Assembly (NCBI RefSeq): GCF_902713615.1
Contig: NW_024055492.1
Location: 124,001 to 188,000, forward strand
From: Scyliorhinus canicula
Taxonomy: Eukaryota
DNA: 64,000 nt
Direction of reading: 5' to 3'
In this document: positions 3,620-48,239 of the stretch, piece by piece
How the letters are laid out: each line of letters begins with the position of its first letter
Numbering within the stretch: the stretch's first letter is position 1
Program-made: the position numbers and the translations under genes
The notes under the pieces: generated by a model
Told to the model about the DNA's origin: nothing
Database searches by the model: none
Seen by the model: the letters and a program-made list of their open reading frames with translations, nothing else

Positions 3620-4841
3620 CCAGACTCGGGGCAGATGGATAGTCTCTCTCCAGTGTGACTGTGCTGATGTGCTGTGAGATCAGATGATCACCTGAATCCA
3701 GTCCCACAGTCCAAGCATCTGAACGGTCTCTCATCAGTGTGAACACTTGGATGGTGCATCAGGTCTTGGGAACTTTTATAGAACTTCCTACAGTCTGACC
3801 ATTGGAAAGGTCTCTCGTCAGTGTGAACCTGTTGGTGTCTTGTTAGATTGAATGTGTGAGAAAATCCCTTCCCACACTTGGAGCAGGTGAATATCTTTCT
3901 CCAGTGGGAACTTGTTGGTGTGTCAGCAGGTGGGATAAACAAGTAAACCCCTTCTCACACTCGGAGCAAGTGAACAGCCTCTCCCCAGTGTGCACTTGCT
4001 GGTGTTTAATAAGGTCAGATGATTGCCTGAATCTAGTCCCACATGGCAAGCACCTGAACGGTGTCTCGTCAGTGTGAACATGTCGATGGGACATCAGTCC
4101 TGAGAACTTTTAAAGCACTTTCCACAATCTGCGCCTTTAAAACATCTCACATCAGTGTGAACCCACTGGTGTGTCAGCAGGTTGGATGGGTGAGCAAATC
4201 CCCTCCCACACTTGGAGCAGCTGAACGGTCCGGGTGTGACCTCGCTGGTGTGTCAGCAGATGGGATAAGGTAGTGAATCCCTTCCACACTTAAAGCAGGT
4301 GAAGTGTCCAACGTGACTGCCCTGATGAACTTCCAGCTCTGACAGGTAACTGAATCCTTCCACACAGCCCCCAAATATCTGGAGATTCTCCCTGTTGTTT
4401 TTTTTTTAATTTAGAGTACCCAATTATTATTTTTTTATTTTCCAATTAAGGGGCAATTTAGTGTGGCCAATCCACCTAACCTGCACATCTTTGGGCTATG
4501 GGGGTGAAACCCACGCAGACACGGGGAGAATGTGCAAACTCCACACGGACAGTGACCCAGGGCCGGGATTCGAACCTGGGTCCTCAGTGCCGCAGTCCCA
4601 ATGCTATCCACTGTGCCACGTGCCGCCCCGATTCTCCCTGTTGTGACAGTATTTATGTTTCGACAGGTCAGATAGTCGGCTGACTTCTCTTCCACACACA
4701 TAACACAGAAATAGTTTCTGCTCACTGTGAGCAGTCTTTCCTTCCATGTCCAAAATACAGTGATATATTAGGCGACTCTGTCATATCCTGATGTGATGTT
4801 TGGTTTGGGTTTCAAGACTGGCGAGTTCCTCTTCTAATAAC
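3620..4841 (-). pseudogene. C2H2-ZNF pseudogene terminal exon (~8 degenerate fingers, frameshifts), interrupted by a poly(A) SINE and abutting a CR1 tail
   Basis: [29 protein letters not shown] and [29 protein letters not shown] occur in different frames; acceptor tttcacag at 4842. Confidence 0.88.
4398..4629 (-). mobile_element. Short poly(A)-tailed tRNA-derived V-SINE with a ~15-bp TSD
   Basis: TSD gattctccctgttgt at 4384-4398 and 4630-4644; T-run = poly(A) on the minus strand. Confidence 0.9.
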
Positions 4842-10969: not shown

Positions 10970-11503
10970 TTACCTATGGCCACGTTGGTGTCTCCGCAGG
11001 GAGGATGAAGCGGTGAATCCCTTCCCACAATCTGAGCAGATGAACAGCCTCCTCCCAGTATGAATTAGCTGGTGTCTCAGCAGGTCGGCTGACTGAGTGA
11101 ATCCCTCCCCACACTTGGAACAAGCGAATGGCCTCTCCCCAGTATGAATTCGCTGGTGCGTCTGCAGTTGGGATGATTGAGTGAATCCCTTCCCACACTC
11201 TGAGCAGGTAAATGGTTTCTCACCAGTGTGAACTCGCTGATGTTTTTGCAGGGTGGATGGCTCAGTGAATCCCTTCCCACACTTGGAGCAGGTGAATGGT
11301 ATCTCCCCAGTGTGACTGCGTCGATGAGTATCCAGCTTGGATGGGGAAGTGAATCTTTTCCCACAGTCTACACATTTCCACAATTTCTCCTCAGTGTGAC
11401 TGCATTTGTGGCTTTTGAGGCCTGATGATCGAGCAAGTCCTCGTCCACACACACAACACGTGGACGGTTTCTCCCCACTGTGAACGATGCTTTTTCCTTC
11501 CAT
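10970..11503 (-). CDS. C2H2 zinc-finger protein, 6 fingers (first one degenerate); likely start [13 protein letters not shown]
   Basis: Open frame with CxxC..HxxxH repeats and TGEK/RPF linkers. The exon acceptor is tttcacag at 11610, so the ORF-track Met at 11668 is intronic. Confidence 0.82.
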
Positions 11504-11914
11504 GTTCCAAGTACGATGATATTCAGCATATGTACAATTGAGGACTCTGTCAGATCCTGATGTGATGCTTGGTTTGATTCTGCAGACTTTGAAGCCTCCT
11601 TCGAACACCCTGTGAAACTGATTTAAAAACAGAAAATAGGGAGTGAGAGAGAACCCACAAAAACACAAAGGCAGGTTGTGAAATTGAGCTGAATGAACCT
11701 GGTCATTTGTGGGGCCGGCACTGGGAAAAAGTGACCATGAAAACGGCTGGATTGTTATAAAAACCCAACTGGCCTCTTTGGGAGGAATGAGAGAGAGGTG
11801 AAGAGGGATTTTGTATATCTACAAGACATGATAAGAGAGTAGTTGGCAAAACATCCAATTTCAACATTGAGCTTCATAAATAGAAATACTGATACTGAAA
11901 CTATGCTTCTGGTA

Positions 11915-21683: not shown

Positions 21684-24000
21684 TTGTGTAAATAGATGTA
21701 AACGGGTGTGAGATAACCAGGATTATGGAGACATGGCTGCAGGATGACCAGGGGTGGGAACTGAATATCTTCAGTATTTAGGAAGGACAGACAAAAAGGA
21801 AAAGGCAGTGGAGTGGCAGTGCTGGTTAAAGAGGAAATTAATGCAATAGTGAGGAAGGATATTAGCTCCGATAATGTGGAGTCTGTATGGGTAGAGCTGA
21901 GAAACACCAAGGGGCAAAAAACATTAGTGGGCATCGTATATAGACCCCCAAACTGCAGTGGTGATGTTGGGAATGGCACAAAACAGGAAATTAGGCCGAT
22001 TGTATAAGTTTCTGTCGGTATGTGAAGAGAAAAAGATCGGTGAAGACAAATGTAGGTTCCTTTCAGTCAGAAACAGGGGAATGTATAATAGGGGACAAAG
22101 AAATGGGTGAGCAAATAAATACATACTTTGCTTCTGGCTTCACAAATTAGATGCTAGAAATGTTGGGGAAGGCAGGATTTAGTGAGAGGGAGGAACTGAA
22201 GGAGATCAATATTCGAGAAATTGTGTTGGGGAAATTGATGGGATTGAAGGCTGATAAATCCCCAGGGCCTGATAATCTGCATCCCAAAGTACTTAAGGAA
22301 GTGGCTCTAGAAATAATGGATGCATTGGTGGTCATCTTCCAGGATTCTATAGACTCTGGAACAATTCCTGCACATTGGAGGGTGGCTTATGTAACTCACT
22401 ATTTAAATAGGGAGCTCGAGACAAAACAGGAAATTATAGACCAGTAAGCCTGACATCGGCAGTGGGGCAAATTTTAGAATCCATTATCAAAGATTTTATA
22501 GCAAAGCACTTCGAAACCAGTGGCAGGATCGGACAGAGCCAGCATGGATTTATGAAGGGGAAATCATGCTTGACAAATCTACTGGAATTCTTCAAGTGTG
22601 TAACTGGTAGAGTTGACGAGGGAGAGCCAGTGGATGTGGTATATTTGGACTTTCAGATGGCTTTCGACTTATTCCTGCATAAGATATTAGTGTGTAAAAT
22701 GAAAGCACATGGGATTAGGGGTCGTCTCTTGAGATGGATAAAAAACTGACTGGCAGGCAGTGACTAGTGGGGTACCGCAGGGATCGGTGCCTGGGCCCAG
22801 ATATTCACAAGATATATAAATGATTTTTCTTTTCAAATTTAAAGTACCCAATTCTATTTTTGCAATGAAGTGGTAATTTAGCATGGCCAGTTCCCCTCCA
22901 CTGCACATCTTTGGGGTTATGGGGGTGAGACCCACGCAAAATCGAGAACTTGACTGCACACAGACAGTGACCCAGGCATGATTGAACCCTGATCCTCAGC
23001 ACCATGAGGCAGCTGCACCACTTATATATTAACAACTTAGATGTGGGAACAAAATGCAATATCTCCAAATTTACAGATCACACAAGTTGCTTGGGAGGGT
23101 GAGCTGTGAGGAGGATGCAGAGATCCTTCAGTGTGATTTGGACAAGTTGAGTGAGTGGGCAAATGAATGGCAGATGCAGTATAATTTGGAGAAATGCGAG
23201 GTTATCCACATTGGTACCAAAAATGAGAAGGCAGACTATTATCTGAACGGCCATAGATTAGGAGAGGCGGGGAATTAGCAACGAGACCTGGGTGTCCTTG
23301 TACACCAGTCACTGAAGGTAAGCATGCAGCTACAGCAGGCGGTAAAGAAGGTAAATGCTATGCTAGCCTTCATTGCGAGCGGATTCGAGTACAGGAGCAG
23401 GAATATCTTGCTGTTATTACACAGGGCCATGGCGAGGCCATACCTGGAATATTGTGAGCAGTTTTGGTCTCCTTATCTGAGGAAGGATGTTCTTGCTCTA
23501 GAGGGAGTGCAGCGAGCGTTTACCAGACTGATTCCTGGGATGGTAGGACTGACGTATGAGAGATTGAATCAGTTAGGTTTGTATTCGCTAGAGTTCAGAA
23601 GAATGAGGGGGATCTCCTAGAAACCTATAATATTCGAACAGGACTTAACAAGGTAGATGCAGGAAAGATTTTCCCGATGGTGGGAGTGTACAGAACCAGA
23701 GGTCGCAATCTGAGGATACGGGGGAGACCATTTAGACAGAGATGAGGAGAAATTTCTTCAACCAGAGAGTGGTGAGCCCGTGGAATTTGTTACCACAGGA
23801 AAACTTTAAGGCCAATACATTATTTGTTTGCAAGAAGCAGTTAGATATCGCACTGAAGGCGAAGGGGGTCAAAGGATGTAGAGGGAAAAGCGGAATTAAG
23901 CTATTGAGTTGGATGATAAGCTATGATCATAATGAATGGCAGAGCAGGTGCGAAGGGCCAAATGGCCTCTTCCTGCTCTCCCTTTTCATGTTTCTATATA
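21684..24000 (+). mobile_element. 5'-truncated, internally deleted CR1 LINE (EN remnant, RT, 3' tail) inserted in the ZNF exon; contains a SINE at ~22820-23015
   Basis: VWVELRNTKGQKTLVGIVYRPPN, KADKSPGPD, QHGFMKGKSCLTNLLEFF, VDVVYLDFQMAFD, LEYCEQFWSPYLRKD; tail gggccaaatggcctcttcctgctc. Confidence 0.93.
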
Positions 24001-24013
24001 ATCCCTTCCCACA

Positions 24014-24916
24014 CTAAGAGCAGATGAATTGCCTCTCTCCAGTGTGAACTCGCCGGTGTTTCTGAAGGTTGGACGAATTACTGAATCCCTTCCCACACTG
24101 AGAGCAGGTGAATGGCCTCTCCCCAGTGTGAATTCGCTGATGTTTCCGCAGGGTGGATAAATCACTGAATCCTTTCCCACACTGAGAGCAGATGAATGGC
24201 CTCTCCCCAGTGTGAATTCGCTTATGTCTCTTCATGGTGGATGAACTAACAAATCCCTTCCCACACTGAGAGCAGGTGAACGGCCTCTCCCCAGTGTGAA
24301 CTCGCTGATGGTTCCGAAGGTTGGACGAGTTATTGAATCCCTTCCCACACTGAGAGCACGTGAATGGCCTCTCCCCAGTGTGAATTCGCTGGTGTGTCTG
24401 CAGACTGGATAAATGTGTAAATCCATTCCCACACTGAGAGCAGATGAATGGCCTCTCCCCAGTGTGAATTCGCTGGTGTGTCTGCAGGGTGGATAAATCA
24501 CTGAATCCCTTCTCACAGAGGGAGCAGGTGAATGGCCTCTCCCCAGTGTGAACTTGCTGATGTCTCCGTAGGTTGGATGAAGAACTGAATCCCGTCCCAC
24601 ACTGGGAGCAGGTGAATGGCTTCTCCCCAGTGTGAACTCGCTGGTGTGTATGCAGACTGGATAACTGAGTGAATTCCTTCCCACACTGAGAGCAGGTGAA
24701 CGGCCTCTCCCCAGTGTGAACTCGCTGGTGTGACTGCAGGTTAAAGAAGTGAGTGAATCCTTTCCCACACTGAGAGCAGGTGAATGGCCTCTGCCCAGTG
24801 TGACTGCGGCGATGAATCTCCAGCACAGATGGGGCTCTAAATCCCTTCCCACAGTCAGCACATTTCCACGGTTTCTCCATGTTTTGGGTCTCCTCGTGTC
24901 TCTCCAGATTGGACAA
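24014..24916 (-). CDS. C2H2 zinc-finger protein, 300 aa, 10 complete fingers with TGERPF linkers
   Basis: Open ORF within a terminal exon whose acceptor is at ~25252. It ends at a TAG inside finger 11, just before a CR1 insertion. No KRAB or other effector domain is visible. Confidence 0.85.
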
Positions 24917-32994: not shown

Positions 32995-33349
32995 CTACGA
33001 GGATCGAGCCAAATATAATTAGTTTGTTTATTAATCCAGGATATGTTTTTTAATATTCTCGTTTCATTTTCTCCCGCTGCTAATTTAACATATTTGTCAT
33101 TGCATATCTACTGCTGAGTTCATGACACTCGGAAATCGATCTCTGTAACTTTTTTCTTCCAATTAAGGGGCAAGTTAGCCTGGCCAATCCACCTACCCTG
33201 CACATCTTTGGGTTGTTGGCGTGAGACCCGCGGGTCACTGGGAAAGTCCACTGGGACACAGACCCAGGAGCGGGATCAACCCCAGGTCCATGGTGGCGTG
33301 AGGCAGTAGTGCTAACCACTATGCCACCGTGCCGCCCTTGCCTGACGTT

Positions 33350-35149: not shown

Positions 35150-35960
35150 CTTCCTTCTCTTTTGGTTGGGAAAGTGGAGGTAAAATGTGTTAGTATTGCC
35201 CCTTTGCTCTCTTTGTTGGGGAAGTGGGGAGGCAGTGGATTAAATAATGTCCTTCCACTCATTGTTGGAAGCGGGTGTCCAGTGGATTAACTAATGTACA
35301 CCCCCCTCATTGTTGGAAGCGGATGTACAGTGGATTAACTAATGTACCCCCCCCCCCCTCATTGTTGGAAGCGGATGTACAGTGGATTAACTCAGCCCAC
35401 CACCGTCTCTTTGTTGGGGAAGTGGGGGCACAATGTGTTAACTAATGCTCCTCCCCTCGCTTTGTTGGGGAAGTGGGGGCACAGTGTGTTAACTAATGCT
35501 CCTCCCCTCGCTTTGCTGGGGAAGTGGGGGCACAGTGTGTTAACTAATGCTCCTCCCCTCGCTTTGCTGGGGAAGTGGGGGTACAGTGTGTTAAGTAATG
35601 CCCCAACCCCTCTCTTTGTTGGGGACGTGGGGAGACAATGGATTAACTAATGCCCCTCTCTTTGTTGGTGAAGTGGGGGTACAGTGTATTAACTAAAGCT
35701 CCTCCCACTCTCTATGTTGGGGAAGTGGGGGTACAGTGAATTAACTAAAGACCCTCTCTCTATTGGGGAAGTGGGGGTACAGTGGATTAACTAATACCCC
35801 TCCCCTCCCTCTATTGAGGAAGTGGGGGTACAGTGGATTAACGAATGCCCTTCCCCCTCTCTCTTTGTGGGAGGTGGGTGGGTGGGTGGGGAGACAGTGG
35901 AATAACTAATACCCCTCCCGCTCTCTCTGTTGGGGAGGTGGGGGTACAGTGGATTAACAA
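35150..35960. repeat. ~51-bp tandem repeat (ctcgctttgttggggaagtgggggcacagtgtgttaactaatgctcctccc), about 16 degenerate units
   Basis: 17-aa periodicity in ORF 35342-35650; unit read directly at 35456-35560. Confidence 0.9.
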
Positions 35961-36556
35961 TTTCACTTTCCCCTCTCTTTGACTGGAGATTGTTGGTCCA
36001 TGTTTCTGTGTGACCCTCAAATCAGTTCCCAGTGGGTCTCATGCAGCAACTTAAAGCTGACATTAATTTTAAAGGGATGGACAATGAGAGAAGCAGGAAC
36101 ACCGAGATCTAAATGTGATGGGTTTGTTTGTCTGAAATGGGAAATTGTCCGATTTCTCCTCATGTGGAGGAAAGTCAATGAAGATATTTTGCTGAATCCT
36201 GGAATGAATGAGTTTTACTCTGTCTCTAACCCAGGGGTATTTGAGCTGGGAGCTCTGGTTGTATCAGACTTGGGGCTGAGACCTGTAGAAATCCGGGTCT
36301 CATTGACCAGGGACTGGTTTAAAATCGCTGGATTTTAAAGCAGACCAAGACAGGCCAGCAGCACGGTTCAATTCCCGTACCAGCCTCCCCGAAAAGGTGC
36401 CGGAATGTGGCGCTGAGGGGCTTTTCACAATAACTTGACTGAAGCCTACTTGTGACAATAAGTGATTTTCATTTCATTTTCAGATCTAACATCAGTAAAG
36501 TGGAAACACCATTAATCAAGCGGCTGTATGTTTAAATCACAATTAGAGGAAACGTT

Positions 36557-36598: not shown

Positions 36599-36990
36599 TC
36601 ATTGACATGAATTAACGGTGTCCATCAGAGCGAGGGAAATGTTCACAAAACTGGGTTTACCGCTGGATTTATCAACCGTTCTGTTGATGATCTTCAAGGG
36701 GATGGCTTCATGTCCCACCACACAGGAGTAAGAAGCGCCGCTGGCCCACTCCTCCGCTGCAATGGATAACAGGCTGTACATGAAGAAGGAGCTATTGCCG
36801 TTCTCCGCCATCACCTCGGTGTTCTTGTAGTTCCCGGGATTCACCGGCTTGTCATTGACGGTCCACTTGACGAAGATCTCTCGGGGGGAGAAACCTCTCA
36901 CTAAGCAGCTGAGGGAGACGAATCTCTGAGCGGAGACATCTTCAGCCGAGGGCAGGAGGACAGAGACGGACGGTTCCCGCGGGTTGGGAT
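36599..36990 (-). CDS. IGHM: Cmu4 exon plus secretory tailpiece ([20 protein letters not shown])
   Basis: ttttctgcag acceptor. Internal donor G|GTAAA at 36661/36660 serves the membrane form. Tailpiece has an N-I-S glycosylation site and the penultimate Cys. Confidence 0.98.
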
Positions 36991-37269
36991 CTGCAGAAAA
37001 TGTACAATAAATGTCAATAAAATGGGGAATTCCGGAGACAATGGAACCGCGGGTTAGATGTGAGAGAAATGTGTTTTGTGTTGGATTTTAAAGGTTTCCA
37101 TTTTCCACTTTGGGGTATGTCCGGGTTCCCAGCTCGGAGCAGAGGTGGACACAATCCTTTTCCCTGAGAATTTACGGATATTGGATTCGAAAGTTTCAGA
37201 AAGTGTACAGCAGGGAAACAGGCCATTCGGTCCGCCTGTTCTGTGTTGGTGTATAAACTCCACACGAGG

Positions 37270-38290
37270 CTCCTCCCACCTTACCCCAAGAAGATTGGAC
37301 AACTGCCAAAGTAACACCCTTATTCAAAAGGGGAGGGAGTCAAACACAGGTAACTATAGGCCAGGGACCTTAACATCTGTCAGTGAAAAACGGTTCGAGT
37401 CCATTATAACAGATCCAATAGCTGAGCATTTCGAAATACTCAATATAATCAAACAGAGTCAGCACGGCTTCGGGAAGGGTAAATCATGCCTGACAAATTT
37501 AGTGCCCTTATTTGAGGTGATGACGAGAAGGCGAGAGAGGGAGGGGGAGGGGGTGGGGCAATAGATGTAATATACATGAATTTCAAAACGGTGATTGATA
37601 AATGAATGTACTATTCCCATGTTTGCAGATGGCAAAAAATAGGTAAAAAGGCAAGTGGTGAGGATTACAGGAAATCCACAGAGGGACAGAGAATGTGAGG
37701 TTCGACACTTTGGTAGGAGGAAGAACATAAATAATTATTATTTATATAGAGAAAGACTGAAGAAAGCTGAAGTAACGGGGGAATTGGGGGCCCTCGTGCA
37801 GAAACCACAAAAAGCAAGTTCTGCAGGTAATATGGAGGCAAATTGAATGCTGATCTTTATTTTAAAGGGAGTAGAATATAACAATGGGGAAGCCTAGCTA
37901 AAACTGGGGAATTAGTTAGACAACACCTGATATACTTTGAATAGTTTTGGTGCCCGTATCTAAGGAAGACAGATTGGTTTTGAAGGCAGTCCAGAGAACG
38001 ATCACGAGGTTGATCCCGAGTATGGAGGGATTTTCTTACGGGGAGAGGTTAAGTCGGCTGGGCTGTACTGATTGGAGTTTAGAAGAATGAAGACGACCTC
38101 AGATTCTGGGTCGGTCAGTACGTTCAAGGTTGAGGGACACATATTTTAAATCAGTAAAAGCATCAAGAGATATGGTGATAAGGCGGGAAAGAGGAGTTGA
38201 AGATTATCACATCAGATCTTACTGAAGGCTGGACCGGTGTTGATGGGCCCAATGGCCTACATCTGCTCATAAGTCTTGTGGTCTATGGTC
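37270..38290 (+). mobile_element. Degenerate CR1 LINE RT fragments in the Cmu3-Cmu4 intron
   Basis: NYRPGTLTSV..., SQHGFGKGKSCLTNL motifs and a CR1-like 3' tail near 38240-38290. Confidence 0.8.
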
Positions 38291-38505
38291 TCGCTTCATC
38301 TAAACCCAATATCACTGGGTTTAATTCATTGTTCATTCATCTGCATATCAATTTCCCCCTTAAACTCTAAATGCCCAGAGTATTCAGTTAGTGGAATTGC
38401 CAATCAGAATGGACCATAAATACACTGAATGCTAAATACTGACCGCTGCACTGACACTAGAAATAGACACAATGACTCACTTATTGCTTCAGTCTCACCG
38501 CTCAC

Positions 38506-38814
38506 CTATTTTTTTGTGAGTTGAAATTCTTAAAGGAGTTGGCAGGTCCTGATGGCTCGCCACACAGTCAAACACAGCCCCACTCAGCCAGGCTTGTGTG
38601 GAGATGTTTAATTTGCTGACCACGCTCTCAGTATCTGCCCCAGGCTGGTCGGCAATCTCTGATTTCAGCGGCTTCTTCGCTTCACTCCAGGACACGTTGA
38701 CTCCATAAGGAGCATTCGAAATGACGCAGGTTAAGGTTACAGTCGCCTCCAGTAAGACCTGTTCTATTGGTGGTGGCAGTATTGTTACTGAGGCATCAGT
38801 GCAAACGGAAGGAT
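38506..38814 (-). CDS. IGHM: Cmu3 exon (D)[42 protein letters not shown]...[22 protein letters not shown]
   Basis: ttcacag acceptor, GTGAGC donor, 309 nt, open frame. Confidence 0.96.
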
Positions 38815-39434
38815 CTGTGAATGAAAAAAGTGGAAATCAACCCAAGTTTCATCTTCAGAATCAGGACAGCAGGATTCAGCGTTCACTCACTCAATGGGAA
38901 TAAATCAACTTCGAAATAACAACCTCTAATGATCGCCTTTAAATCTTCTATACACAATGGATAACCAGTTTGGTTTGTGAAAACTATTCTCATTGTGAAA
39001 TACAGTCAGCCTCGAAACCATTCTAATGAATCAGTATTACAGCATTCCCAATACAAATATTCCAGTCCTGATCTCAGAATCCTAATATGGAAGGCTGCTT
39101 GATAAATATCTTGAATGAATTTTTCAAAATCTTCGCCCCGAGCTGGTTTCAGTAAAGGGTTCCAGACAGCCATTGCCTCTGCAATTTAATCAGCTGTCTC
39201 GGGATAAAGCTGATATCAAATCCACCTCACTCCCTAAATTACTTCAGGTGAGAGGGAAACATTTATTTCTATACTGATCAAATCCTGAATGGTGATCAAT
39301 CCAAATGCATCTCTTACATCAGAATGAAACACAAACTACATGGCAGTAAATTCGAAGTTATTCTGTGCTTTGCACTAACTTCAGTAAATTACTGTGCAGG
39401 ATGATTTATTGTTTCCTCTGTTTGGGCCTCTTAC

Positions 39435-39746
39435 CAGACGCGGTGATGTTGTGACTTTGGGTGACCCCTTGATGAATGACCTGGCAGGTATAGACCGCTT
39501 TGCTGAACCATTCCCCAGCAGAGACTGTCAGTCGACTGCTCGCCGAGAAGTTCCCGTTCACTTCACAGGCGGGAGAGGTGACAATTCCTGAACCCATGGC
39601 TTGTCCATTCTTCAGCCACTTCACCGTCATTGACTTTGGACTGAAATCGTTGATTGAACAGACCATGGTTGCAAATTTCTGTCTTGTGATTTCTTCATTG
39701 GAACTCACGGTGAGGAGAACATTTGGATGGATGTCAGGTAGAGGAC
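39435..39746 (-). CDS. IGHM: Cmu2 exon (C)[47 protein letters not shown]...[19 protein letters not shown]
   Basis: tttcttgaag acceptor, GTAAGA donor, 312 nt, open frame. Confidence 0.96.
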
Positions 39747-39943
39747 CTTCAAGAAACAGAAATTAGACATTTCTTGAAGAAGATGTTGTAAGGAATAAAA
39801 TGACTAATTATATTTTCAGTTTCTCGGTGGTCACTATTTCTCTCAGGAATCAGAACTGTGCAGAGAACCATCAATGTGTTATGACCAAAGATTTAAATAA
39901 AGTAATCAAAGCGTCTGTTTCTCACAGTTTTCACAACACTTAC

Positions 39944-40243
39944 ATGTCATTCCAATGCTCTTGTCTGAGCCGCTGTGTCGAACCTCACAGCTGATTTTGC
40001 TGCATGCCCCCTCTGACTCGGTGATGATTAACTGGCTGCTCAGAGTGTAGGTTCCCTTCTTGTTTCTCACTGACGGGTATTTCTTAACTCCAGTGGTGAT
40101 CTGCTGCCCATCTTTCTTCCAGGTAAGACTGGTGATTTCTGGGGAGTAGTCCATCGCCAAACAGCCGAAGGTCACAGAGCCGTCAGTGTTGTGTTGCTGA
40201 CAGGAGGAGACCAGACTGTAGAGAGTGGGCGGAGACAGTGTCG
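39944..40243 (-). CDS. IGHM: Cmu1 exon (A)[45 protein letters not shown]...[16 protein letters not shown]
   Basis: ctcccag acceptor, GTAAGT donor, 300 nt, C1-set Cys/Trp/Cys. Confidence 0.97.
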
Positions 40244-40349
40244 CTGGGAGAGAATGGCCAATTGAACAAGTTAAACTCTGGGACTTGTCATTAAGATATC
40301 ATACAACTTAGAATTTGGATACAGTTACAAATTTATCCTCACATGTTCG

Positions 40350-40900
40350 CATTAAAACTGCATCAATACTTGAGCTTCTGTTACTTCTAACATTTGAGAA
40401 TCACCATTTGTTTATTCCTTCTGTAGAAACTCACATCTCTTTCTCCATTTCTAACACCTCGCAGAAATGTAGCATTTTGATGTCATCTGAAAACGTACCA
40501 TTCATTACTTTCAATGAGCAGAGCGGAGGGTTTTCCCAATTATTTATGCCACCAATGTTTTTTTCCATCAACTGCACTTTGTGATAAAGAAGTTGTCTCT
40601 CCATTTCTGTCATTGCTATTTTGGAAATTGCCTGTGTTCAAACTGACTGATGTCCCCCCTCTCTCCACCTCACTACCCCCACTCCCCAAAACAAGGAGTC
40701 GTGACTTTGCTTCAGAAAAATCTTCCAGGTACTTACATAATGACGATAACATTCTACATTTGAGCACATGTGCAAGTAACTCCAAAATTCTCCAATTACA
40801 GGACCCTGGACATTAAAAGCGGGATGCGGCCATTCGGTCCCTCAGGTCTCCTGCACCATTCAATATGATTATGGCGGAGCAGATTGTGGGATGAACTCCG
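40350..40900 (-). mobile_element. CR1-type LINE RT/3' fragments just upstream of Cmu1
   Basis: Minus-strand sequence resembling the ISKFADDTK region and the 3' tail gggccgaatggcc. Confidence 0.55.
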
Positions 40901-40919
40901 CATTCCATGTATCCGCGAT

Positions 40920-43900
40920 AATCAGCTTCCTGTCCTTTTCCCAGCTCTCTGATCTTTCCTCCACTTCTATAATTTGCCCAGCTGCACCTTTCCAGGTTGT
41001 TTGCTCTTTGCCTCAGCTTCTGGAACTTTCCACTTGCTCTTTGTGCTTTTCCCCAGAACATGGCACTTTGCCCCCTGATTATTGGCTTTTGCCCCAGCAA
41101 TGATCATTTTTCCCCTTGTTCCTGCAGCTTCTCTCCCCGGTCTGCGCTCAGCTCTCTGGTCATCTCACCTGCTCACTACTCAGCTCTCGTCTTTCCCAGG
41201 CTCCCTATACTTTAACCCAGTTTTATACCATTTCCCAGGCTCCATGTGTTCCCGACCACCCCCCCCCCCCCGACCCCCACCTCCCCTACCCAGCTCGCTG
41301 CCGTTTCCGAGGCTCCCTGTGATTTCCCCAGCTCTCTACCTTTTCCCAGGCTCCTTGTACTTCCCCCCCCCCCCCAGCTCTCTGCCTTTTCCCAGGCTCC
41401 CCACACTTTTCCCCAGCTCTCTACCTATTCCCAGGCTCCCTGTGCTTTCCCCAACTCTCTACCTTTTCCAAGGCTCCCTGTACTTCCCCTCAGCTCTCTG
41501 CCTTTTCCCAGGCTCCCCACACTTTTCCCCAGCTCTCTACCTTTTCCCAGGCTCCCTGTGCTTTCCCCAACTCTCTACCTTTTCCCAGGCTCCCTGCGCT
41601 TTCCCCAGCTCTCTACCTTTTCCCAGGCTTCCTGTGCTTTCCCCAACTCTCTGCCTTTTCCCAGGCTCCCTGCGCTATCCCCAGCTCTCTACCTTTTCCC
41701 AGGCTCCCTGTGCTTTTCCCCAGCTCTCTGCCTTTTCCCAGGTTCGCTGTGCGTCCCCCAGATCTCTACCGTTTCTAATACTCCCCGCAATTTCCCCCAG
41801 CTTTCTGCCTTTTCCCAGGTACGCTGAGCTATTCCCCAGTTCTCTACCTTTTCCCAGTCTCCCTGTGCTTCCCCCCAACTCTCTACATTTTCCCAGACTC
41901 CCGGCACTTCTCTTCAGGTCTGAGCTTTCGCCCCGCTTCCTGCCTTTTCCGGACTCCTTTTGCTTTCCTCCAGCTCTCAAACTTTTCCCAGTCTCCCTGT
42001 GATTTGCCCCAGCTCTCTCCCTTGTCCCAGGCTCCCTGCACTTTCTCCTAGCTCTCTAACGTTCCAAGGCTCCCTGTGCTTTCCCCCAGCTCTCCACCTT
42101 TTCCCAGGCTCCCTGTGCTTTCCCCCAGCTCTCCACCTTTTCCCAGTCCCCCTGTGCTTTCCCCCAGCTCTCCACCTTTTCCCAGTCTCCCTGTGCTTTC
42201 CCCCAGCTCTCCACCTTTCCCCAGTCTCCCTGTGATTTCCCCCAGCTCACTACCGTTTCCCAGGCTCCCTGTGATTTCCCCCAGCTCACTACCTTTTCCC
42301 AGGCTCCCTGTGCTTTTCCCCAGCTCTCTATTCTTTCCCAGGCTCCCTGCGCTCCCCCCCCCCCCCCCCCGGTCTCTACCTTTTCCCAGGCTTCCTGCAC
42401 TTTTCACCACTTCTCTACCTTTTCCCAGTCTCCCTGCACTTTTCCCCAACTCTCTGCCTTTTCCCAGTCTCTCTATGCTTTCCCCCGGCTCTCTGCCTTT
42501 TCCCAGTCTCCCTGCGCTTTTCCCCAACTCTCTACCTTTTCCCAGGCTCCCTGTGCTTTCCCCCAGCTCTCTACCTTTTCCCAGTCTCCCTGTGATTTCC
42601 CCCAGCTCACTATCTTTTCCCAGGATCCATGTGCTTTCCCCCAGCTCTCTACCTTTTCCCAAGCTTCCTGTGCTTTCCCCCATCTCTCTATTCTTTCCCA
42701 GGCTCCCTGCGCTCCCCCCCCCTCTACCTTTTCCCAGGCTCCCTGTGCTGCCGCCCCGCTTCCTGCCTTTTCCGGACATCTTTTGCATTCTTCCAGCTCT
42801 CAAACTTTTCCCAGTCTCCCTGTGATTTCCCTCAGCTCTCCACCTTTTCCCAGTCTCCCTGTGATTTCCCCCAGCTCACTACCTTTTCCCAGGCTCCCTG
42901 TGCTTTTCCCCAGCTCTCTATTCTTTCCCAGGCTCCCTGCGCTTCCCCCCCCCCCCCGTCTCTACCCTTTCCCAGGCTTCCTGCACTTTTCACCACTTCT
43001 CAATCTTTTCCCAGTCTCCCTACGCTTTTCCCCAACTCTCTGCCTTTTCCCAGTCTCCCTATGCTTTCCCCCGGCTCTCTGCCTTTTCCCAGTCTCCCTG
43101 CGCTTTTCCCCAACTCTCTACCTTTTCCCAGGCTCCCTGTGCTTTTCCCCAGCTCTCTACCTTTTCCCAGTCTCCCTGTGATTTCCCCCAGCTCACTACC
43201 TTTTCCCAGGCTCCCTGTGCTTTTCCCCAGCTCTCTATTCTTTCCCAGGCTCCCTGCGCGTCCCCGTCCCCCCCCGTCTCTACCTTTTCCCAGGCTTCCT
43301 GCACTTTTCCCCAACTCTCTACCCTTTCCCAGTCTCCCTATGCTTTCCCCCGGCTCCCTGCCTTTTCCCAGTCTCCCTGCGCTTTTCCCCAACTCTCTAC
43401 CTTTTCCCAGGCTCCGTGTGCTTTCCCCCAGCTCTCTACCTTTTCCCAGTCTCCCTGTGCTTTCCCCCAGCTCTCTACCTTTTCCCAAGCGTCCTGTGCT
43501 TTCCCCCATCTCTCTATACTTTCCCAGGCTCCCTGCGCTCCCCTCCCCCCCTCTTCCTTTTCCCAGGCTCCCTGTGCTGCCGCCCCGCTTCCTGCCTTTT
43601 CCGGACATCTTTTGCTTTCTTCCAGCTCTCAAACTTTTCCCAGGCTCCCTGTCCTATTCCCCAGCTCTCGAACTTTTCCCAGGCTCTCTGTCCTATTCCA
43701 CAGCTCTCTACCTTTTCCCAGGCTCCCGGTGATTTCCCCCAGCTCTCTACCTTTTCCCAGGCTCCCGGTGCTTCCACCCAGCTCTCTACATTTTCCCAAG
43801 CTTCCTGTGCTTTCCCCCATCTCTCTATTCTTTCCCAGGCTCCCTGCGCTTCCCCCCCCCCCCCCCCCCACACCGTCTCTACCTTTTCCCAGGCTCCCTG

Positions 43901-46900
43901 CACTTTTCCCCAGCTCTCGGCCTTTGCCCAGGCTCCCTGTGCTTTTCCCCACTTCTCTACCTTTTCCCTGTCTCCCTATGCTTTCCCCCGGCTCTCTGCC
44001 TTTTCCCAGTCTCCCTGTGCTTTCCCCCGGCTCTCTGCCTTTTCCCAGGCTCCCTGTGCTTTCCCCCAACTCTCTTCCTTTTCCCAGGATCCTTGTGCAT
44101 TTCCCCAGCTCCCTACCTTTTCCAAAGCTTCCTGTGCTTTCCCCCAGCTCTCTATTCTTTCCCAGGCTCCCTGCGCATTCCCCTCCCGCCCCCCACCCCC
44201 TTTCCCGTCTCTACCTTTTCCCAGGCTTCCTGCACTTTTCACCACTTCTCTACCTTTTCCCAGTCTCCCTACGCTTTTCCCCAACTCTCTGCCTTTTCCC
44301 AGTCTCCCTATGCTTTCCCCCGGCTCTCTGCCTTTTCCCAGTCTCCCTGCGCTTTTCCCTAACTCTCTAACTTTTCCCAGGCTCCCTGTGCTTTTCCCCA
44401 GCTCTCTACCTTTTCCCAGTCTCCCTGTGATTTCCCCCAGCTCACTACCTTTTCCCAGGATCCATGTGCTTTTCCCCAGCTCTCTACCTTTTCCCAGGCT
44501 CCCCGCACTTTTCCCCAGCCCTCTACCTTTTCCCAAGCTTCCTGTGCTTTCCCCCATCTCTCTACTCTTTCCCAGGCTCCCTGCGCTCCCCCCCCCCCCC
44601 CCTCTACCTTTTCCCAGGCTCCCTGTGCTGCCGCCCCGCTTCCTGCCTTTTCCGGACATCTTTTGCTTTCTTCCAACTCTCAAACTTTTCCCAGGCTCCC
44701 TGTCCTATTCCCCAGCTCTCGAACTTTTCCCAGGCTCACTGTCCTATTCCCCAGCTCTCTACCTTTTCCCAGGCTCTCGGTGATTTCCCCCAGCTCTCTA
44801 CCCTTTCCCAGGCTCCCGGTGCTTCCACCCAGCTCTCTACAATTTCCCAAGCTTCCTGTGTTTTCCCCCAACTCTCTATTCTTTCCCAGGCTCCCTGCAC
44901 TCCCCCCCCCCCCCCCCACCGTCTCTACCTTTTCCCAGGCTCCCTGCACTTTTCCCCAGCTCTCGGCCTTTGCCCAGGCTCCCTGTGCTTTTCCCCACTT
45001 CTCTACCGATTTGGGGCAGCAGGGTAGCATGGTGGTTAGCATAAATGCTTCACAGCTCCAGGGTCCCAGGTTCGATTCCCGGCTGGGTCACTGTCTGTGT
45101 GGAGTCTGCACGTCCTCCCCCTGTGTGCGTGGGTTTCCTCCGGGTGCTCCGGTTTCCTCCCACAGTCCAAAGATGTGTGGGTTAGGTGGATTGGCCATGC
45201 TAAATTGCCCGTAGTGTCCTAATAAAAGTAAGGTTAAGGGGGGGCTTGTTTGGGTATAGGGTGGATATGTGGGTTTGAGTGGGGTGATCATGGCTCGGCA
45301 CAACATTGAGGGCCGAAGGGCCTGTTCTGTGCTGTACTGTTCTATGTTCTATGTTCTACCTTTTCCCAGTCTCCCTATGCTTTCCCCCGGCTCTCTGCCT
45401 TTTCCCAGTCTCCCTGTGCTTTTCCCCGGCTCTCTGCCTTTTCCCAGGCTCCATGTGCTTTCCCCCAACTCTCTTCCTTTTCCCAGGATCCTTGTGCCTT
45501 TCCCCAGCTCTCTACCTTTTCCCAAGCTTCCTGTGCTTTCCCCCAATTCTCTATTCTTTCCCAGGCTCCCTGCGCTTCCCCCTCCCGCCCCCACCCCCTT
45601 CCCCGTCTCTACCGTTTCCCAGGCTCCCTGCACTTTTCCCCACTTCTCTACCTTTCCCAGGCTCCCTGCGCTTTTCCCCAAGCTCGCTACCTTTTCCCAG
45701 GCGCCCTGCACTTTTCCCCACTTCTCTACCTTTTCCCAGTCTCCCTGTGCTTTCCCCCGGCTCTCTGCCTTTTCCCAGGATCCTTGTGCCTTTCCCCAGC
45801 TCTCTACCCTTTCCCACGCTTCCTGTGCTTTACCCCAATTTTCTACCTTTTCCCAGGCTCCCTGTGCTTTCCCCCAACTCTCTGCCTTTTCCCAGGATCC
45901 TTGTGCCTTTCCCCAGCTCTCTACCTTTTCCCACGCTTCCCGTGCTTTTCCCCAATTTTCTACCTTTTCTCAGGCTCCCTGTACTTTCCCCAAGCTGTCT
46001 ACCTTTTCCCAGGCTCCCTGCACTTTTCCCAAGTTCACTACCTTTTCCCAGGCTCCCAGCGCTTTTCCCCAAGCTCACTACCTTTTCCCAGGCGCTCTGT
46101 ACTTTCGCCCCGCTTCCTGCCTTTTCCGGAATTCTTTTGCTTTCATCCAGCTCTCAAACTTTTCCCAGGCTCTCTGTCCTATTCCCCAGCTCTCTGCCAT
46201 TTCCCAGGCTCCTGGTGTTTCCCCCCCGGCTCTCTGCCTTTTCCCAGCCTACCTATGCTTTCCCCCCGGCTTCCTGCCTTTTCCCAGCCTCCCTGTGCTT
46301 TCCCCCGGCTCTCTGCCTTTTCCCAGTCTCCACGTGCTTTTCCCCAGCTCTCTACCTTTTCCTAGGCCCCCTGCACTTTCCTCGGCTCTCTGCCTTTTCC
46401 CAGTCTCCCTGTGCTTTTCCCCAGCTCTCTGCCCTTTCCCAGGCTCCCTGTGCTTTCCCCCAGCTCTCTACCTTTACCCTGGCTTCCCGCAGTTTTCCCC
46501 AGCTCTCTACCTTTTCCCAGACACTGTGCTTTCCCCCAGCTCTCTAACGTTTCCCAGGATCCCTGTGCTTTCCCCCAACTCTCTGCCCTTTCCCAGTCTT
46601 CCTGTGCTTTTCCCCAGCTCTCTACCTTTTCCCAGACACTGTGCTTTCCCCCACCTCTCTAACGTTTCCCAGGATCCCTGTAATTTCCCACCCCCGCTTC
46701 CTGCCTTTTCCAGACTCCTTTTGCTTTCCTTCAGTTCTCAAACTTTTCCCAGGCTCCCTGTGCTTTTCCCCAACTCTCAACCTTTTCCCAGTCTCCCTGT
46801 GCTTTTCCCCAACTCTCAACCTTTTCCCAGGCTCCCTGTGCTTTTCCCCAGCTCTCTAACGTTTCCCAGGCTCCCCGCACTTCCCCCCAGCTCTCTACCT

Positions 46901-47160
46901 TTCCCCAGGATCCCTGTGCTTTTCCCCAGCTCTCTGTCATTTCCCAGGCTTCCTGTGCTTTTCCCCAATTTTCTACCTTTTCCCAGGCTCCCTGTGCTTT
47001 TCCCCAGCTCTCTACCTTTTCCCAGTCTCCCTGTGCTTTCCCCCAGCTCTCTGCCCTTTCCCAGGCTCCCTGTGCTTTCCCCAGCTCCCTACCTTTACCC
47101 TGGCTCCCCGCAGTTTTCCCCAGCTCTCTGCTTTTTCCAGGGTTCTCTGTGCTATTCCAT
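40920..47160. repeat. Switch-region-like tandem array; 39-bp unit, minus strand GTAGAGAGCTGGGGGAAAGCACAGGGAGCCTGGGAAAAG (core ~41290-47150)
   Basis: 13-aa periodicity in the artefactual ORFs, unit read directly at 42067-42240, degenerate edges, one SINE insertion. Confidence 0.95.
45013..45358 (+). mobile_element. Young HE1-like V-SINE inserted in the switch-like array
   Basis: Full head, V domain, tail tgttctatgttctatgttcta. Confidence 0.93.
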
Positions 47161-47544
47161 GGCTCTTTGTCATTTTTCCTCTCCCTCTATATTTTCCCAC
47201 GTCCTCTTTACCCACGTTCTCCCAGCCCCCTTGCCAGGCACCCACGTTTGGCCACCACTCGCTCTCGCTCCTCGCTCCAATTCTCTGTTCCTCTCTCGTT
47301 GCAGACTAACTCTCGCCCATTTAGTGAGCAAGGGGACAAGTGAATGAGGGTGAGCGAGCAGGGGTGTGATTTAGGGCTGGAGTGAGAAGAGGGTGGCTGG
47401 GTGTGTCAATGTGCGTGCATTAACAATGGTGGGCGCTTATGAGTGTGGAGCATGAGGATGGGTGTGTGATTAAAAATGAGTGAGGATGGATTGGTGAGTG
47501 AGGGAGGATGTATGGGCGACGGTGGTGCTTGAAAATAAATGAGC

Positions 47545-48140
47545 TCAGTGAGAAGTCTCACAACACCAGGTTAAAGTATAACAGGTTTGTTTCAAACACT
47601 AGCTTTCGGAGCACAGCTCCTTCCTCAGATGAATAGAACATAGAACAGTACAGCACAGAACAGGCCCTTCGGCCCTCGATGTTGTGCCGAGCAATGATCA
47701 CCCTACTCAAACCCACGTATCCACCCTATACCTGTAACCCAACAACTCCCCCCCTTAACATTACTTTTTAGGATACTACGGGCAATTTAGCATGGCCAAT
47801 CCACCTAACCCACACATCTTTGGACTGTGGGAGGAAACCGGAGAACCCAGAGGAAACCCACGCACACAGGGGGAGGACGTGCAGACTCCGCACAGACAGT
47901 GACCCAGCCGGGAATCGAACCTGGGACCCTGGAGCTGTGAAGCATTTATGCTAACCACCATGCTACCGTGCTGCCCGAATGAAGAGGTATGTTCCAGAAA
48001 CATGCATACAGATTTCTGTCTGTATATATTTCTGGAACCTACCTTTTCACTCACCTGAGGAAGGAACTGCGCTCTGAAAGCTCGTGTTTGAAACAAACCT
48101 GTTGGACTTTAATCTAGTGTTGTCAGACTTCTTACTGAGC
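47545..48140. mobile_element. Palindromic element with Penelope-like terminal sequence in both arms, split by a SINE at 47635-47976
   Basis: 47545-47630 is the reverse complement of ~48050-48140 (cctgaggaagga..gctc.gaaagct.gtgtttgaaacaaacctgtt..actttaa.ct.gtgttgt.agacttct.actgagc). Inner arms also pair. The Penelope assignment is from recall, not a search. Confidence 0.7.
47635..47976 (-). mobile_element. Young HE1-like V-SINE inserted in the palindromic element
   Basis: Full length; possible TSD gaat at 47631-47634 and 47977-47980. Confidence 0.93.
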
Positions 48141-48239
48141 TCACCCCAGTCCAACGCCGGCATCACCACATCATGTAAATACATGGGTGGGCGGTTTGGT
48201 GTTGAGTGAGAGTTTGGGTGAGCTGAGCTTCATGAATGT

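What the first reader, a model, noticed from the sequence alone, without database searches (positions are those of the whole stretch)
40920..47160. A tetrapod-like switch (S) region in a shark IgM J-C intron
Seen: ~6 kb of 39-bp repeats ending ~1 kb 5' of Cmu1. On the transcribed-sense (non-template) strand the unit is purine/G-rich and reads ..GAGAGCTGGGGGAAAG..GGGAGCCTGGGAAAAG, carrying the AID hotspot palindrome AGCT next to a G cluster. Established: mammalian Smu consists of GAGCT/GGGGT pentamers (GAGCTGGGGT), is G-rich on the non-template strand, forms R-loops and G4, and lies just upstream of Cmu. S regions are generally held to begin with amphibians, while AID-associated switching between IgH clusters has been reported in nurse shark without classical S regions. 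Inference: position, polarity, length and motif all match, so this could be a bona fide proto-S region for inter-cluster switching, either ancestral or convergent.
Basis: partly seen in the sequence, partly recalled or inferred. Interest (0 to 1): 0.88.

Follow-up and report, generated by a model that had tools for sequence, protein, structure and literature searches.

The report
G-rich switch-like repeat before shark Cmu
A catshark antibody (IgM) gene carries, just upstream of its constant-region exons, a 6-kb G-rich tandem repeat with the sequence hallmarks of a mammalian class-switch region, a structure sharks are said to lack; whether B cells use it is untested.

Summary
The window holds one intact, unrearranged IgM cluster on the minus strand, closest to Scyliorhinus (catshark).

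The JH-Cmu1 intron is 16.07 kb. Its last 40% (47,160 to 41,200, fading to about 40,920) is about 150 copies of a 39-bp unit. The array ends 0.96 kb before Cmu1.

**What fits a mammalian-type S region**
- The transcribed-sense strand is 44% G and 13% C, with 382 G-runs, 78 AGCT and 171 WGCW.
- It is the only large R-loop-prone tract on that strand in 64 kb.
- Place, length, repeat form, polarity and G-density all match. It is not the AT-rich palindromic Xenopus type.

**What weakens the case**
- AGCT survives in only 52% of units and includes the least conserved base of the unit.
- Overall WRC density is about background.
- The nearest known promoter is about 10 kb upstream.
- A 4.5-kb array of opposite polarity, with no AGCT, lies just upstream in the same intron.

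**What could not be tested**
- Whether the 39-mer is Ig-specific: no other shark DNA could be fetched.
- Whether B cells break or join there.

First-stage notes of this scan, all unchecked, flag similar arrays upstream of Cmu1 in about eight other IgM clusters of this genome.

Verdict: a real S-like array. I put 0.45 on it being the break zone for inter-cluster switching and 0.40 on a neutral minisatellite.

The parts
41289..47158 (-). 39-bp tandem array, a dimer of units of about 19 and 20 bp, about 150 copies, G-rich on the IgM sense strand; the candidate switch-like region
45008..45354 (+). tRNA-derived SINE inserted into the array, flanked by a short duplication (about TCTACC) that keeps the repeat phase. 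It is 92-94% identical to four other full-length copies in the window, so the array predates it
40917..41288 (-). degenerate proximal repeats led by CAGCT, plus a C-run; the 500-bp bin 41,316-40,817 holds 8 AGCT and 17 WGCW
40244..56315 (-). JH-Cmu1 intron, 16,072 nt, with three compositional domains on the sense strand: AT-rich (56,315-52,817), C-rich (52,816-47,330) and G-rich (47,316-40,817)
39944..40243 (-). Cmu1 exon (C1-set Ig domain)
   Evidence: 92% identical to a Scyliorhinus torazame protein
56317..56370 (-). JH segment (reads WGQGTMVTVTA, donor gtaaga) with its recombination signal heptamer
57506..57892 (-). VH exon (V-set), unrearranged; D1 at about 57,155-57,140 and D2 at about 56,770 lie between V and J
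36602..39762 (-). Cmu2 (39,409-39,762), Cmu3 (38,498-38,836) and Cmu4 plus secretory tail (36,602-37,087); all open and C1-set
47330..52816 (-). C-rich domain of the same intron: a 24/38-bp array at 48,387-51,036 plus its degenerate tail and CT microsatellites. It is 40-58% C and 1-7% G on the sense strand, and the array has no AGCT or WGCW. It is R-loop-prone only for antisense transcription. The N runs at 51,380-52,067 were left as they are
55265..55608 (-). 11-bp array (31 copies, 94% matches), each copy with one TGCA (WGCW); 0.7 kb 3' of JH

Best explanation
The feature is an old, diverged 39-bp polypurine, G-rich minisatellite. It forms the 3' 40% of the JH-Cmu1 intron of an apparently functional germline IgM cluster in a catshark. 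By sequence it has the properties that make a mammalian switch region work. Proposed mechanism: in an activated B cell the cluster is transcribed from the VH promoter. The G-rich nascent RNA re-anneals to the C-rich template across this 6-kb tract and forms R-loops. AID then deaminates the displaced strand and the AGCT/WGCW sites (78 and 171 of them). The nicks become double-strand breaks. A break here joined to a break in the equivalent tract of another cluster would give the VDJ-to-foreign-C 'switch' reported in nurse shark. Each cluster's single array would serve as both donor and acceptor, like Smu-Smu or trans-chromosomal joining, without an I promoter. Shown here: anatomy, composition, motif counts and R-loop-forming potential by sequence rules. 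Inferred: R-loops in vivo, AID targeting, breaks, joining, and any selection for this role.
For: Position: the array ends 0.96 kb 5' of Cmu1 inside the 16-kb J-C intron of an intact V-D-D-J-C cluster. Form: about 6 kb of tandem repeats. [quoted passage not shown] Polarity and G-density: 42-47% G in every 500-bp bin of the array on the sense strand. R-loop elongation zones are 35-50% G, and 46% against 29% G changes both CSR and R-loops (PMC4245955). My scan, modelled on the QmRLFS R-loop-sequence rules, finds one large sense-strand tract in 64 kb, 47,243 to 40,452, with 320 initiation sites. Hotspots: AGCT is 4.2 times background and WGCW 1.7 times; absolute counts are 78 and 171. GAGCTGGGG occurs 54 times and never outside the intron, and it is shared with the mouse Smu repeat (PMC11897869). 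AID-associated switching between clusters through the J-C intron is reported in nurse shark (Zhu 2012, as summarised in PMC4279169 and PMC8201067). Unchecked first-stage notes flag comparable arrays upstream of Cmu1 in about eight other IgM clusters of this genome.
Against: AGCT is intact in only 52% of 120 units, and its C is the least conserved G/C position of the unit (0.67), so there is no sign of selection on the hotspot. WRC plus GYW together are only about 1.1 times background. AGCT at 13 per kb is well below the 50 per kb of a working synthetic S region (4 per 80 bp; PMC4245955). The nearest known promoter (VH) is about 10 kb upstream, and greater promoter distance lowers R-loop formation and CSR (PMC4245955). 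No cryptic promoters are known in shark Ig loci (PMC4588147). A 4.5-kb domain of opposite polarity lies in the same intron. Tandem repeats are abundant in elasmobranch genomes (bioRxiv 10.1101/2025.06.08.657570). Specialists who studied nurse shark introns concluded there are no S regions, but I could not read those primary papers. Presence in sister clusters may be simple inheritance by cluster duplication.
Confidence: 0.45

Rival explanations
1. A neutral intronic minisatellite. A G-rich polypurine tandem repeat arose once in an ancestral IgM cluster, expanded by slippage and unequal exchange, and was copied along with the clusters. Its likeness to an S region is coincidental and B cells make no special use of it.
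For: The same intron holds a second array of 2.65 kb (4.5 kb with its tails) of opposite polarity with no AGCT or WGCW. The cluster also holds a 51-bp array with G-runs on both strands. Strand-asymmetric minisatellites are therefore common here and their polarity is not consistent. AGCT is the least conserved part of the unit. General hotspot density is about background. Copies are diverged (mean 12% from consensus), and no internal duplication longer than about 360 bp reaches 85% identity. Elasmobranch genomes are rich in tandem repeats, especially in GC-rich regions (bioRxiv 10.1101/2025.06.08.657570).
Against: Place, length, polarity, G-density and an AGCT/G-cluster motif all coincide at the one locus where such a tract has a known use. 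The array is old (a SINE has inserted into it) yet keeps 42-47% G in every 500-bp bin. A 44%-G tract with 64 G-clusters per kb, transcribed in this sense in AID-positive cells, is expected on biochemical grounds to form R-loops whether or not it was selected for that (PMC4245955, PMC5485518).
Confidence: 0.4
2. A platform of transcription-factor sites. The best conserved block of the unit is CTGGGAAA (each base at least 0.93). TGGGAA occurs 120 times and TGGGAAAA 91 times. From my own knowledge, not tested here, GGGAA is the Ikaros core and GGAAA the NFAT core. Such an array could load Ikaros-family proteins and so control cluster silencing, nuclear position or transcription, rather than serve as an AID target.
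For: Per-position conservation is uneven. Positions 16-23 have 24 mismatches in 120 units where about 117 would be expected from the unit mean. TGGGAA is 20 per kb in the array against 0.7 per kb outside the intron. Ikaros binds tandem repeats and recruits target genes to pericentromeric heterochromatin (PMC6477086).
Against: The motif assignment is from memory and the motif is short. Repeat copies are not independent, so uneven conservation can arise from copying history. The paralogous block in the other half-unit is much less conserved. There is no binding data for any shark.
Confidence: 0.1
3. An assembly artefact: a collapsed, expanded or misplaced repeat.
For: Long tandem arrays are hard to assemble, and N runs lie 4 kb away at 51,380-52,067.
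Against: The copies are diverged and individually distinct. The array is interrupted by a clean SINE insertion with a target-site duplication that keeps the repeat phase. It grades into unique sequence at both ends and has no N inside.
Confidence: 0.02

Closest known systems
Mammalian Ig switch regions (Smu, and the 40-80-bp-unit Sgamma/Sepsilon/Salpha type)
   Same: Both lie in the intron just 5' of the first CH exon. Both are kilobases of tandem repeats with about 44% G and dense G-clusters on the non-template strand. Both place AGCT next to a G-run, and the 9-mer GAGCTGGGG is shared with the mouse Smu repeat (PMC11897869). Both pass sequence rules for R-loop formation.
   Different: AGCT density is lower (13 per kb; half of the units have lost it) and overall WRC density is not enriched. 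There is no known I promoter, and the VH promoter is about 10 kb away. There is one array per V-D-J-C cluster rather than one per C gene in a translocon, so any switching would be between clusters. No functional data exist.
Xenopus Smu
   Same: A repetitive tract upstream of Cmu that contains AGCT.
   Different: [quoted passage not shown] This array is G-rich and 77% purine, and its single strands fold no better than shuffles (z -0.2 to -0.7).
Nurse shark inter-cluster isotype switching (Zhu et al. 2012)
   Same: The same kind of gene (IgM minilocus). The reported recombination takes place in the J-C intron and accompanies AID activity (as summarised in PMC4279169, PMC4588147, PMC8201067).
   Different: That work is summarised as finding no S regions. 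The species and order differ (Orectolobiformes against a carcharhiniform catshark). I could not read the primary paper to see whether intron repeats were described.
Generic GC-rich vertebrate minisatellites and polypurine tracts
   Same: Unit length of tens of bp, strand asymmetry, G-runs, diverged copies and an intronic site.
   Different: Generic minisatellites have no fixed relation to a C exon or to the sense of transcription. Whether this family occurs at non-Ig loci could not be tested.

Membership tests
Ig switch region, mammalian (G-rich, R-loop) type | Lies in the intron 5' of the first CH exon and 3' of the J or I exon | tested here: met
   The array at 47,158-41,289 is inside the JH (56,316) to Cmu1 (40,243) intron and ends 0.96 kb from Cmu1
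Ig switch region, mammalian (G-rich, R-loop) type | Kilobases (about 2-12 kb) of tandem repeats | tested here: met
   About 5.9 kb and about 150 copies of a 39-bp unit; 74 near-consensus hits against 0 expected; size range from PMC5485518
Ig switch region, mammalian (G-rich, R-loop) type | High G-density (35-50%) and G-clusters on the non-template strand | tested here: met
   43.6% G overall and 42-47% in each 500-bp bin; 382 runs of 3 or more G; the only large sense-strand R-loop-prone tract in the window; thresholds from PMC4245955
Ig switch region, mammalian (G-rich, R-loop) type | High density of AID hotspots, above all WGCW/AGCT | tested here: inconclusive
   AGCT is 13.1 per kb (4.2 times background) and WGCW 28.7 per kb (1.7 times), with 78 and 171 sites in all. 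WRC plus GYW is only about 1.1 times background. AGCT is kept in 52% of units and is not preferentially conserved. A working synthetic S region has 50 AGCT per kb (PMC4245955)
Ig switch region, mammalian (G-rich, R-loop) type | Own germline (I) promoter a few hundred bp upstream, driving transcription through the repeats | not tested
   I did no promoter prediction. There is no Ig octamer anywhere in the window. The nearest known promoter is VH, about 10 kb upstream. Reviews report no cryptic promoters in shark Ig loci (PMC4588147)
Ig switch region, mammalian (G-rich, R-loop) type | R-loops form over it in activated B cells | not testable with these tools
   Needs DRIP or bisulphite footprinting on catshark B cells
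Ig switch region, mammalian (G-rich, R-loop) type | AID-dependent breaks and recombination junctions fall within it | not testable with these tools
   Needs B-cell DNA (long reads or LAM-HTGTS)
Ig switch region, mammalian (G-rich, R-loop) type | A counterpart is present at each partner C gene (other IgM and IgW clusters) | not testable with these tools
   Shark genome DNA could not be fetched. The only evidence is unchecked first-stage notes on other IgM clusters, and there is none for IgW
Ig switch region, Xenopus (AT-rich, palindromic) type | AT-rich with AGCT-based palindromes or stem-loops | tested here: not met
   57% G+C and 77% purine on the sense strand. Single-strand DNA folds have z -0.03 to -0.74 against shuffles
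Generic dispersed satellite or minisatellite family | The same unit is found at many unrelated loci | not testable with these tools
   Absent elsewhere in this 64-kb window. There are no hits in the metagenome or prokaryote-genome collections, which hold no shark DNA.

The most novel reading that the evidence does not exclude
Cartilaginous-fish IgM clusters carry true mammalian-type (G-rich, R-loop-forming, AGCT-bearing) switch regions that focus AID-induced breaks for switching between clusters. S regions would then either date back to the gnathostome ancestor, before the translocon locus and before I promoters, or have arisen twice by convergence on the same sequence solution.
Probability: 0.3. 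Interest if true: 0.88.

Novelty: new variant of a known kind. Interest (0 to 1): 0.6.

Why it matters
Textbooks and recent reviews place the origin of switch regions, and of canonical class switching, at the amphibians. They describe shark switching between clusters as happening without S regions. A 6-kb array with mammalian S-region composition at the S-region position of a shark IgM gene gives that question a concrete, testable target. One long-read or HTGTS experiment on catshark B cells, or one S-region swap in CH12F3 cells, would show whether R-loop-based targeting of AID predates the translocon locus. If the array proves neutral, it is a caution: S-like composition can arise by chance in repeat-rich genomes.

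Tried and rejected
- **Other clusters and species.** A Cmu1 protein search found only four entries, three from Scyliorhinus torazame and one shark contaminant filed under Salmonella. Their contigs could not be delivered because the file is too large.
- **Array copies through translated ORFs.** Searching with a 209-aa ORF of the array gave no hit at E <= 0.001. This is uninformative.
- **Exact 24-mer of the unit.** There were 0 hits in the metagenome and prokaryote-genome collections, as expected, since neither holds shark DNA.
- **Primary papers.** Zhu 2012, Zhang 2013, Zhu 2011, Kokubu 1988, Zhang 2015 (Xenopus Smu) and Zhang 2014 (Cell Rep) are not held. I cannot say whether nurse or horn shark intron repeats were already described.
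- **Xenopus-type stem-loop structure.** Rejected.
- **Canonical G-quadruplexes.** G-runs in the unit are separated by 9, 5 and 15 nt. There are only 11 motifs with loops of 7 nt or less, and 88 if loops up to 20 nt are allowed. G4 potential is modest and I do not use it as support.
- **Recent homogenisation or higher-order repeats.** No internal duplication longer than about 360 bp reaches 85% identity.
- **A germline 'AID footprint'.** The C of all three AGC triplets is the most variable G/C base. Repeat copies share ancestry and one variant is clearly a propagated subfamily, so I do not lean on this.
- **Scan notebook.** Search by sequence gave nothing. Search by words gave titles only.
Full report
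**What is in the window**

The minus strand carries one complete, unrearranged IgM heavy-chain cluster.
- The VH exon is at 57,892-57,506. D1 is near 57,150 and D2 near 56,770, each flanked by heptamers.
- JH is at 56,370-56,317. It reads WGQGTMVTVTA and has the donor gtaaga.
- The Cmu1 exon is at 40,243-39,944, with its acceptor AG at 40,245-40,244.
- Cmu2, Cmu3 and Cmu4 plus the secretory tail follow at 39,762-36,602. A TM1-like exon lies near 33,000.
- Pfam calls the V exon V-set and all four C exons C1-set. All are open.
- Cmu1 is 92% identical to a Scyliorhinus torazame protein, so the animal is a catshark or a close relative.
- The JH-Cmu1 intron is 16,072 nt.

**The observation**

Tandem Repeats Finder reports a 39-bp array over 41,372-45,007, 45,355-45,582 and 45,599-47,158. 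A 32-nt consensus with up to 3 mismatches matches 74 times, all in one orientation and all between 41,326 and 47,072. None are expected by chance. Consensus 11-mers occur nowhere else in the 64 kb.

The break at 45,008-45,354 is a tRNA-derived SINE. It has a short target-site duplication that preserves the repeat phase. It is 92-94% identical to four other full-length copies in the window, so the array is older than this insertion.

Towards Cmu1 the repeats become irregular but still start with CAGCT, down to about 40,917.

**Anatomy of the unit**

From 120 ungapped units the sense-strand consensus is AAAAGCACAGGGAGCCTGGGAAAAGGTAGAGAGCTGGGG. It is a dimer of half-units of about 20 and 19 nt, each shaped AAAAG-N5-GAGC(C)TGGG.

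Mean identity to the consensus is 0.88. No internal duplication longer than about 360 bp reaches 85% identity. The array is therefore old and not recently homogenised.

**S-region criteria by sequence**

On the sense strand the array is 43.6% G, 13.2% C and 33% A, which makes it 77% purine.
- It has 382 runs of three or more G (64 per kb against 11 per kb elsewhere).
- It has 78 AGCT (13.1 against 3.1 per kb).
- It has 171 WGCW (28.7 against 17.2 per kb).
- It has 54 GAGCTGGGG, which never occurs outside the intron.

Every 500-bp bin of the array holds 42-47% G. Published work sets R-loop elongation zones at 35-50% G. It also shows that dropping from 46% to 29% G lowers both R-loops and CSR (PMC4245955).

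I wrote a scan modelled on the QmRLFS R-loop-sequence rules. On the IgM sense strand it finds a single large R-loop-prone tract in the window, 47,243 to 40,452, with 320 initiation sites.

Mouse Smu repeats are printed as GAGCTGAGCTGGGGTGAGCT (PMC11897869), so the AGCT-plus-G-cluster core is shared. Single-strand DNA folding shows no stem-loops beyond shuffled controls. The likeness is therefore to the mammalian G-rich type, not to the AT-rich palindromic Xenopus type (PMC4279169).

**What weakens the case**

- *Hotspot conservation.* AGCT is intact in only 52% of units. The C of AGCT is the least conserved G/C position of the unit (0.67). The best conserved block is CTGGGAAA. Nothing suggests selection on the hotspot.
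- *Hotspot density.* WRC plus GYW is only about 1.1 times background. AGCT density is a quarter of that in a working synthetic S region (PMC4245955), although the absolute number of sites is large.
- *Promoter distance.* The array starts 9.2 kb 3' of JH, about 10 kb from the VH promoter. Distance from the promoter reduces R-loops and CSR (PMC4245955), and no cryptic promoters are known in shark Ig loci (PMC4588147).
- *A second array of opposite polarity.* The intron has three compositional domains: AT-rich (56.3-52.8 kb), C-rich on the sense strand (52.8-47.3 kb; 40-58% C) and G-rich (47.3-40.8 kb). The 24/38-bp array of the C-rich domain has no AGCT or WGCW. So a large array of the 'wrong' polarity lies directly upstream. 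A third array with G-runs on both strands lies between Cmu4 and the TM exons. Strand-asymmetric minisatellites are frequent in this cluster, and elasmobranch genomes in general are rich in tandem repeats (bioRxiv 10.1101/2025.06.08.657570).

**What could not be tested**

I could reach neither.
- Contigs of S. torazame were not delivered.
- A protein search with an array ORF found nothing.
- The DNA collections that can be scanned hold no shark sequence.

One S. torazame gene model spans 24 kb from a V-set to a C1-set exon, which suggests long J-C introns in a congener. It says nothing about their content.

This scan's own first-stage notes flag 'switch-region-like' arrays of 3-10 kb, or AGCT-dense 29-bp arrays 430-510 bp upstream of Cmu1, in about eight other IgM clusters of the same genome. 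These notes are unchecked. Even if they are right, sister clusters may share the array by descent.

**Literature**

Accessible reviews agree on two points. Sharks lack S regions while still switching VDJ between clusters in step with AID activity (PMC4279169, PMC4588147, PMC8201067). Canonical S regions start with amphibians (PMC10450919). No paper in the searched library describes an S-like array in a shark Ig intron. The primary nurse shark and horn shark papers were not available, so prior description of intron repeats cannot be excluded.

**Reading**

The feature is real and meets the sequence-level definition of a mammalian-type S region on place, form, polarity and G-density. It meets the hotspot criterion only partly.

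A 44%-G, G-cluster-dense tract transcribed in this sense in AID-expressing B cells should form R-loops on biochemical grounds. I therefore favour it as the preferred break zone for inter-cluster switching (0.45). A neutral minisatellite with coincidental likeness is nearly as probable (0.40). An array of TGGGAAA protein-binding sites (0.10) and an assembly artefact (0.02) are minor rivals.

It is best filed as a possible new variant of a known kind. There is one S-like array per minilocus and no I promoter, and it would act between clusters.

Noticed in passing
window 47330-52816 (core array 48387-51036): A second large tandem array (24/38-bp units, TGAGTGAGGGTGGG on the plus strand) sits in the same J-C intron with the opposite polarity. 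It is 56% C and 2% G on the IgM sense strand, with no AGCT or WGCW. It is R-loop-prone only for antisense transcription, and it abuts the G-rich array at about 47,320, giving a sharp GC-skew flip.
   Followed up: partly
window 41289-47158, positions within the 39-bp unit: Conservation within the unit is uneven. The C of each of the three AGC (WRC) triplets is the most variable G/C base (0.67-0.76), whereas the two non-WRC C positions are at 0.92-0.93. G in GYW context is also more variable than other G. The block CTGGGAAA is nearly invariant. This could be a deaminase-like mutational footprint or a protein-binding constraint, but repeat copies are not independent.
   Followed up: partly
window 55265-55608: An 11-bp array (31 copies, 94% matches) lies 0.7 kb 3' of JH. 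Each copy holds TGCA, giving 31 WGCW sites in 344 bp, the densest WGCW cluster in the intron and much nearer the promoter than the 39-bp array.
   Followed up: partly
window 45008-45354: A tRNA-derived SINE is inserted into the 39-bp array with a target-site duplication that keeps the repeat phase. About 27 further full or partial copies lie in the window, and the four full-length ones are 92-94% identical to it.
   Followed up: yes
protein P0001: A 132-aa 'hypothetical protein, partial' filed under Salmonella enterica serovar Typhimurium is 86% identical to this shark Cmu1 exon. It is almost certainly shark DNA contaminating a bacterial assembly (480-bp contig).
   Followed up: no
window 35157-35981: A 51-bp tandem array (16 copies) lies between Cmu4 and the transmembrane exons, with G-runs on both strands.
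   Followed up: no
window 24017-24916, 10973-11818, 3691-4109 (minus strand): C2H2 zinc-finger coding arrays (84-bp periodicity) flank the IgM cluster on its 3' side. They are interspersed with SINE and LINE fragments and reverse-transcriptase ORFs (22,150-23,617).
   Followed up: no
S. torazame gene model for P0004: A gene model in a related catshark joins a V-set exon to a C1-set exon across 24 kb, which suggests that very long J-C introns are shared within the genus.
   Followed up: no
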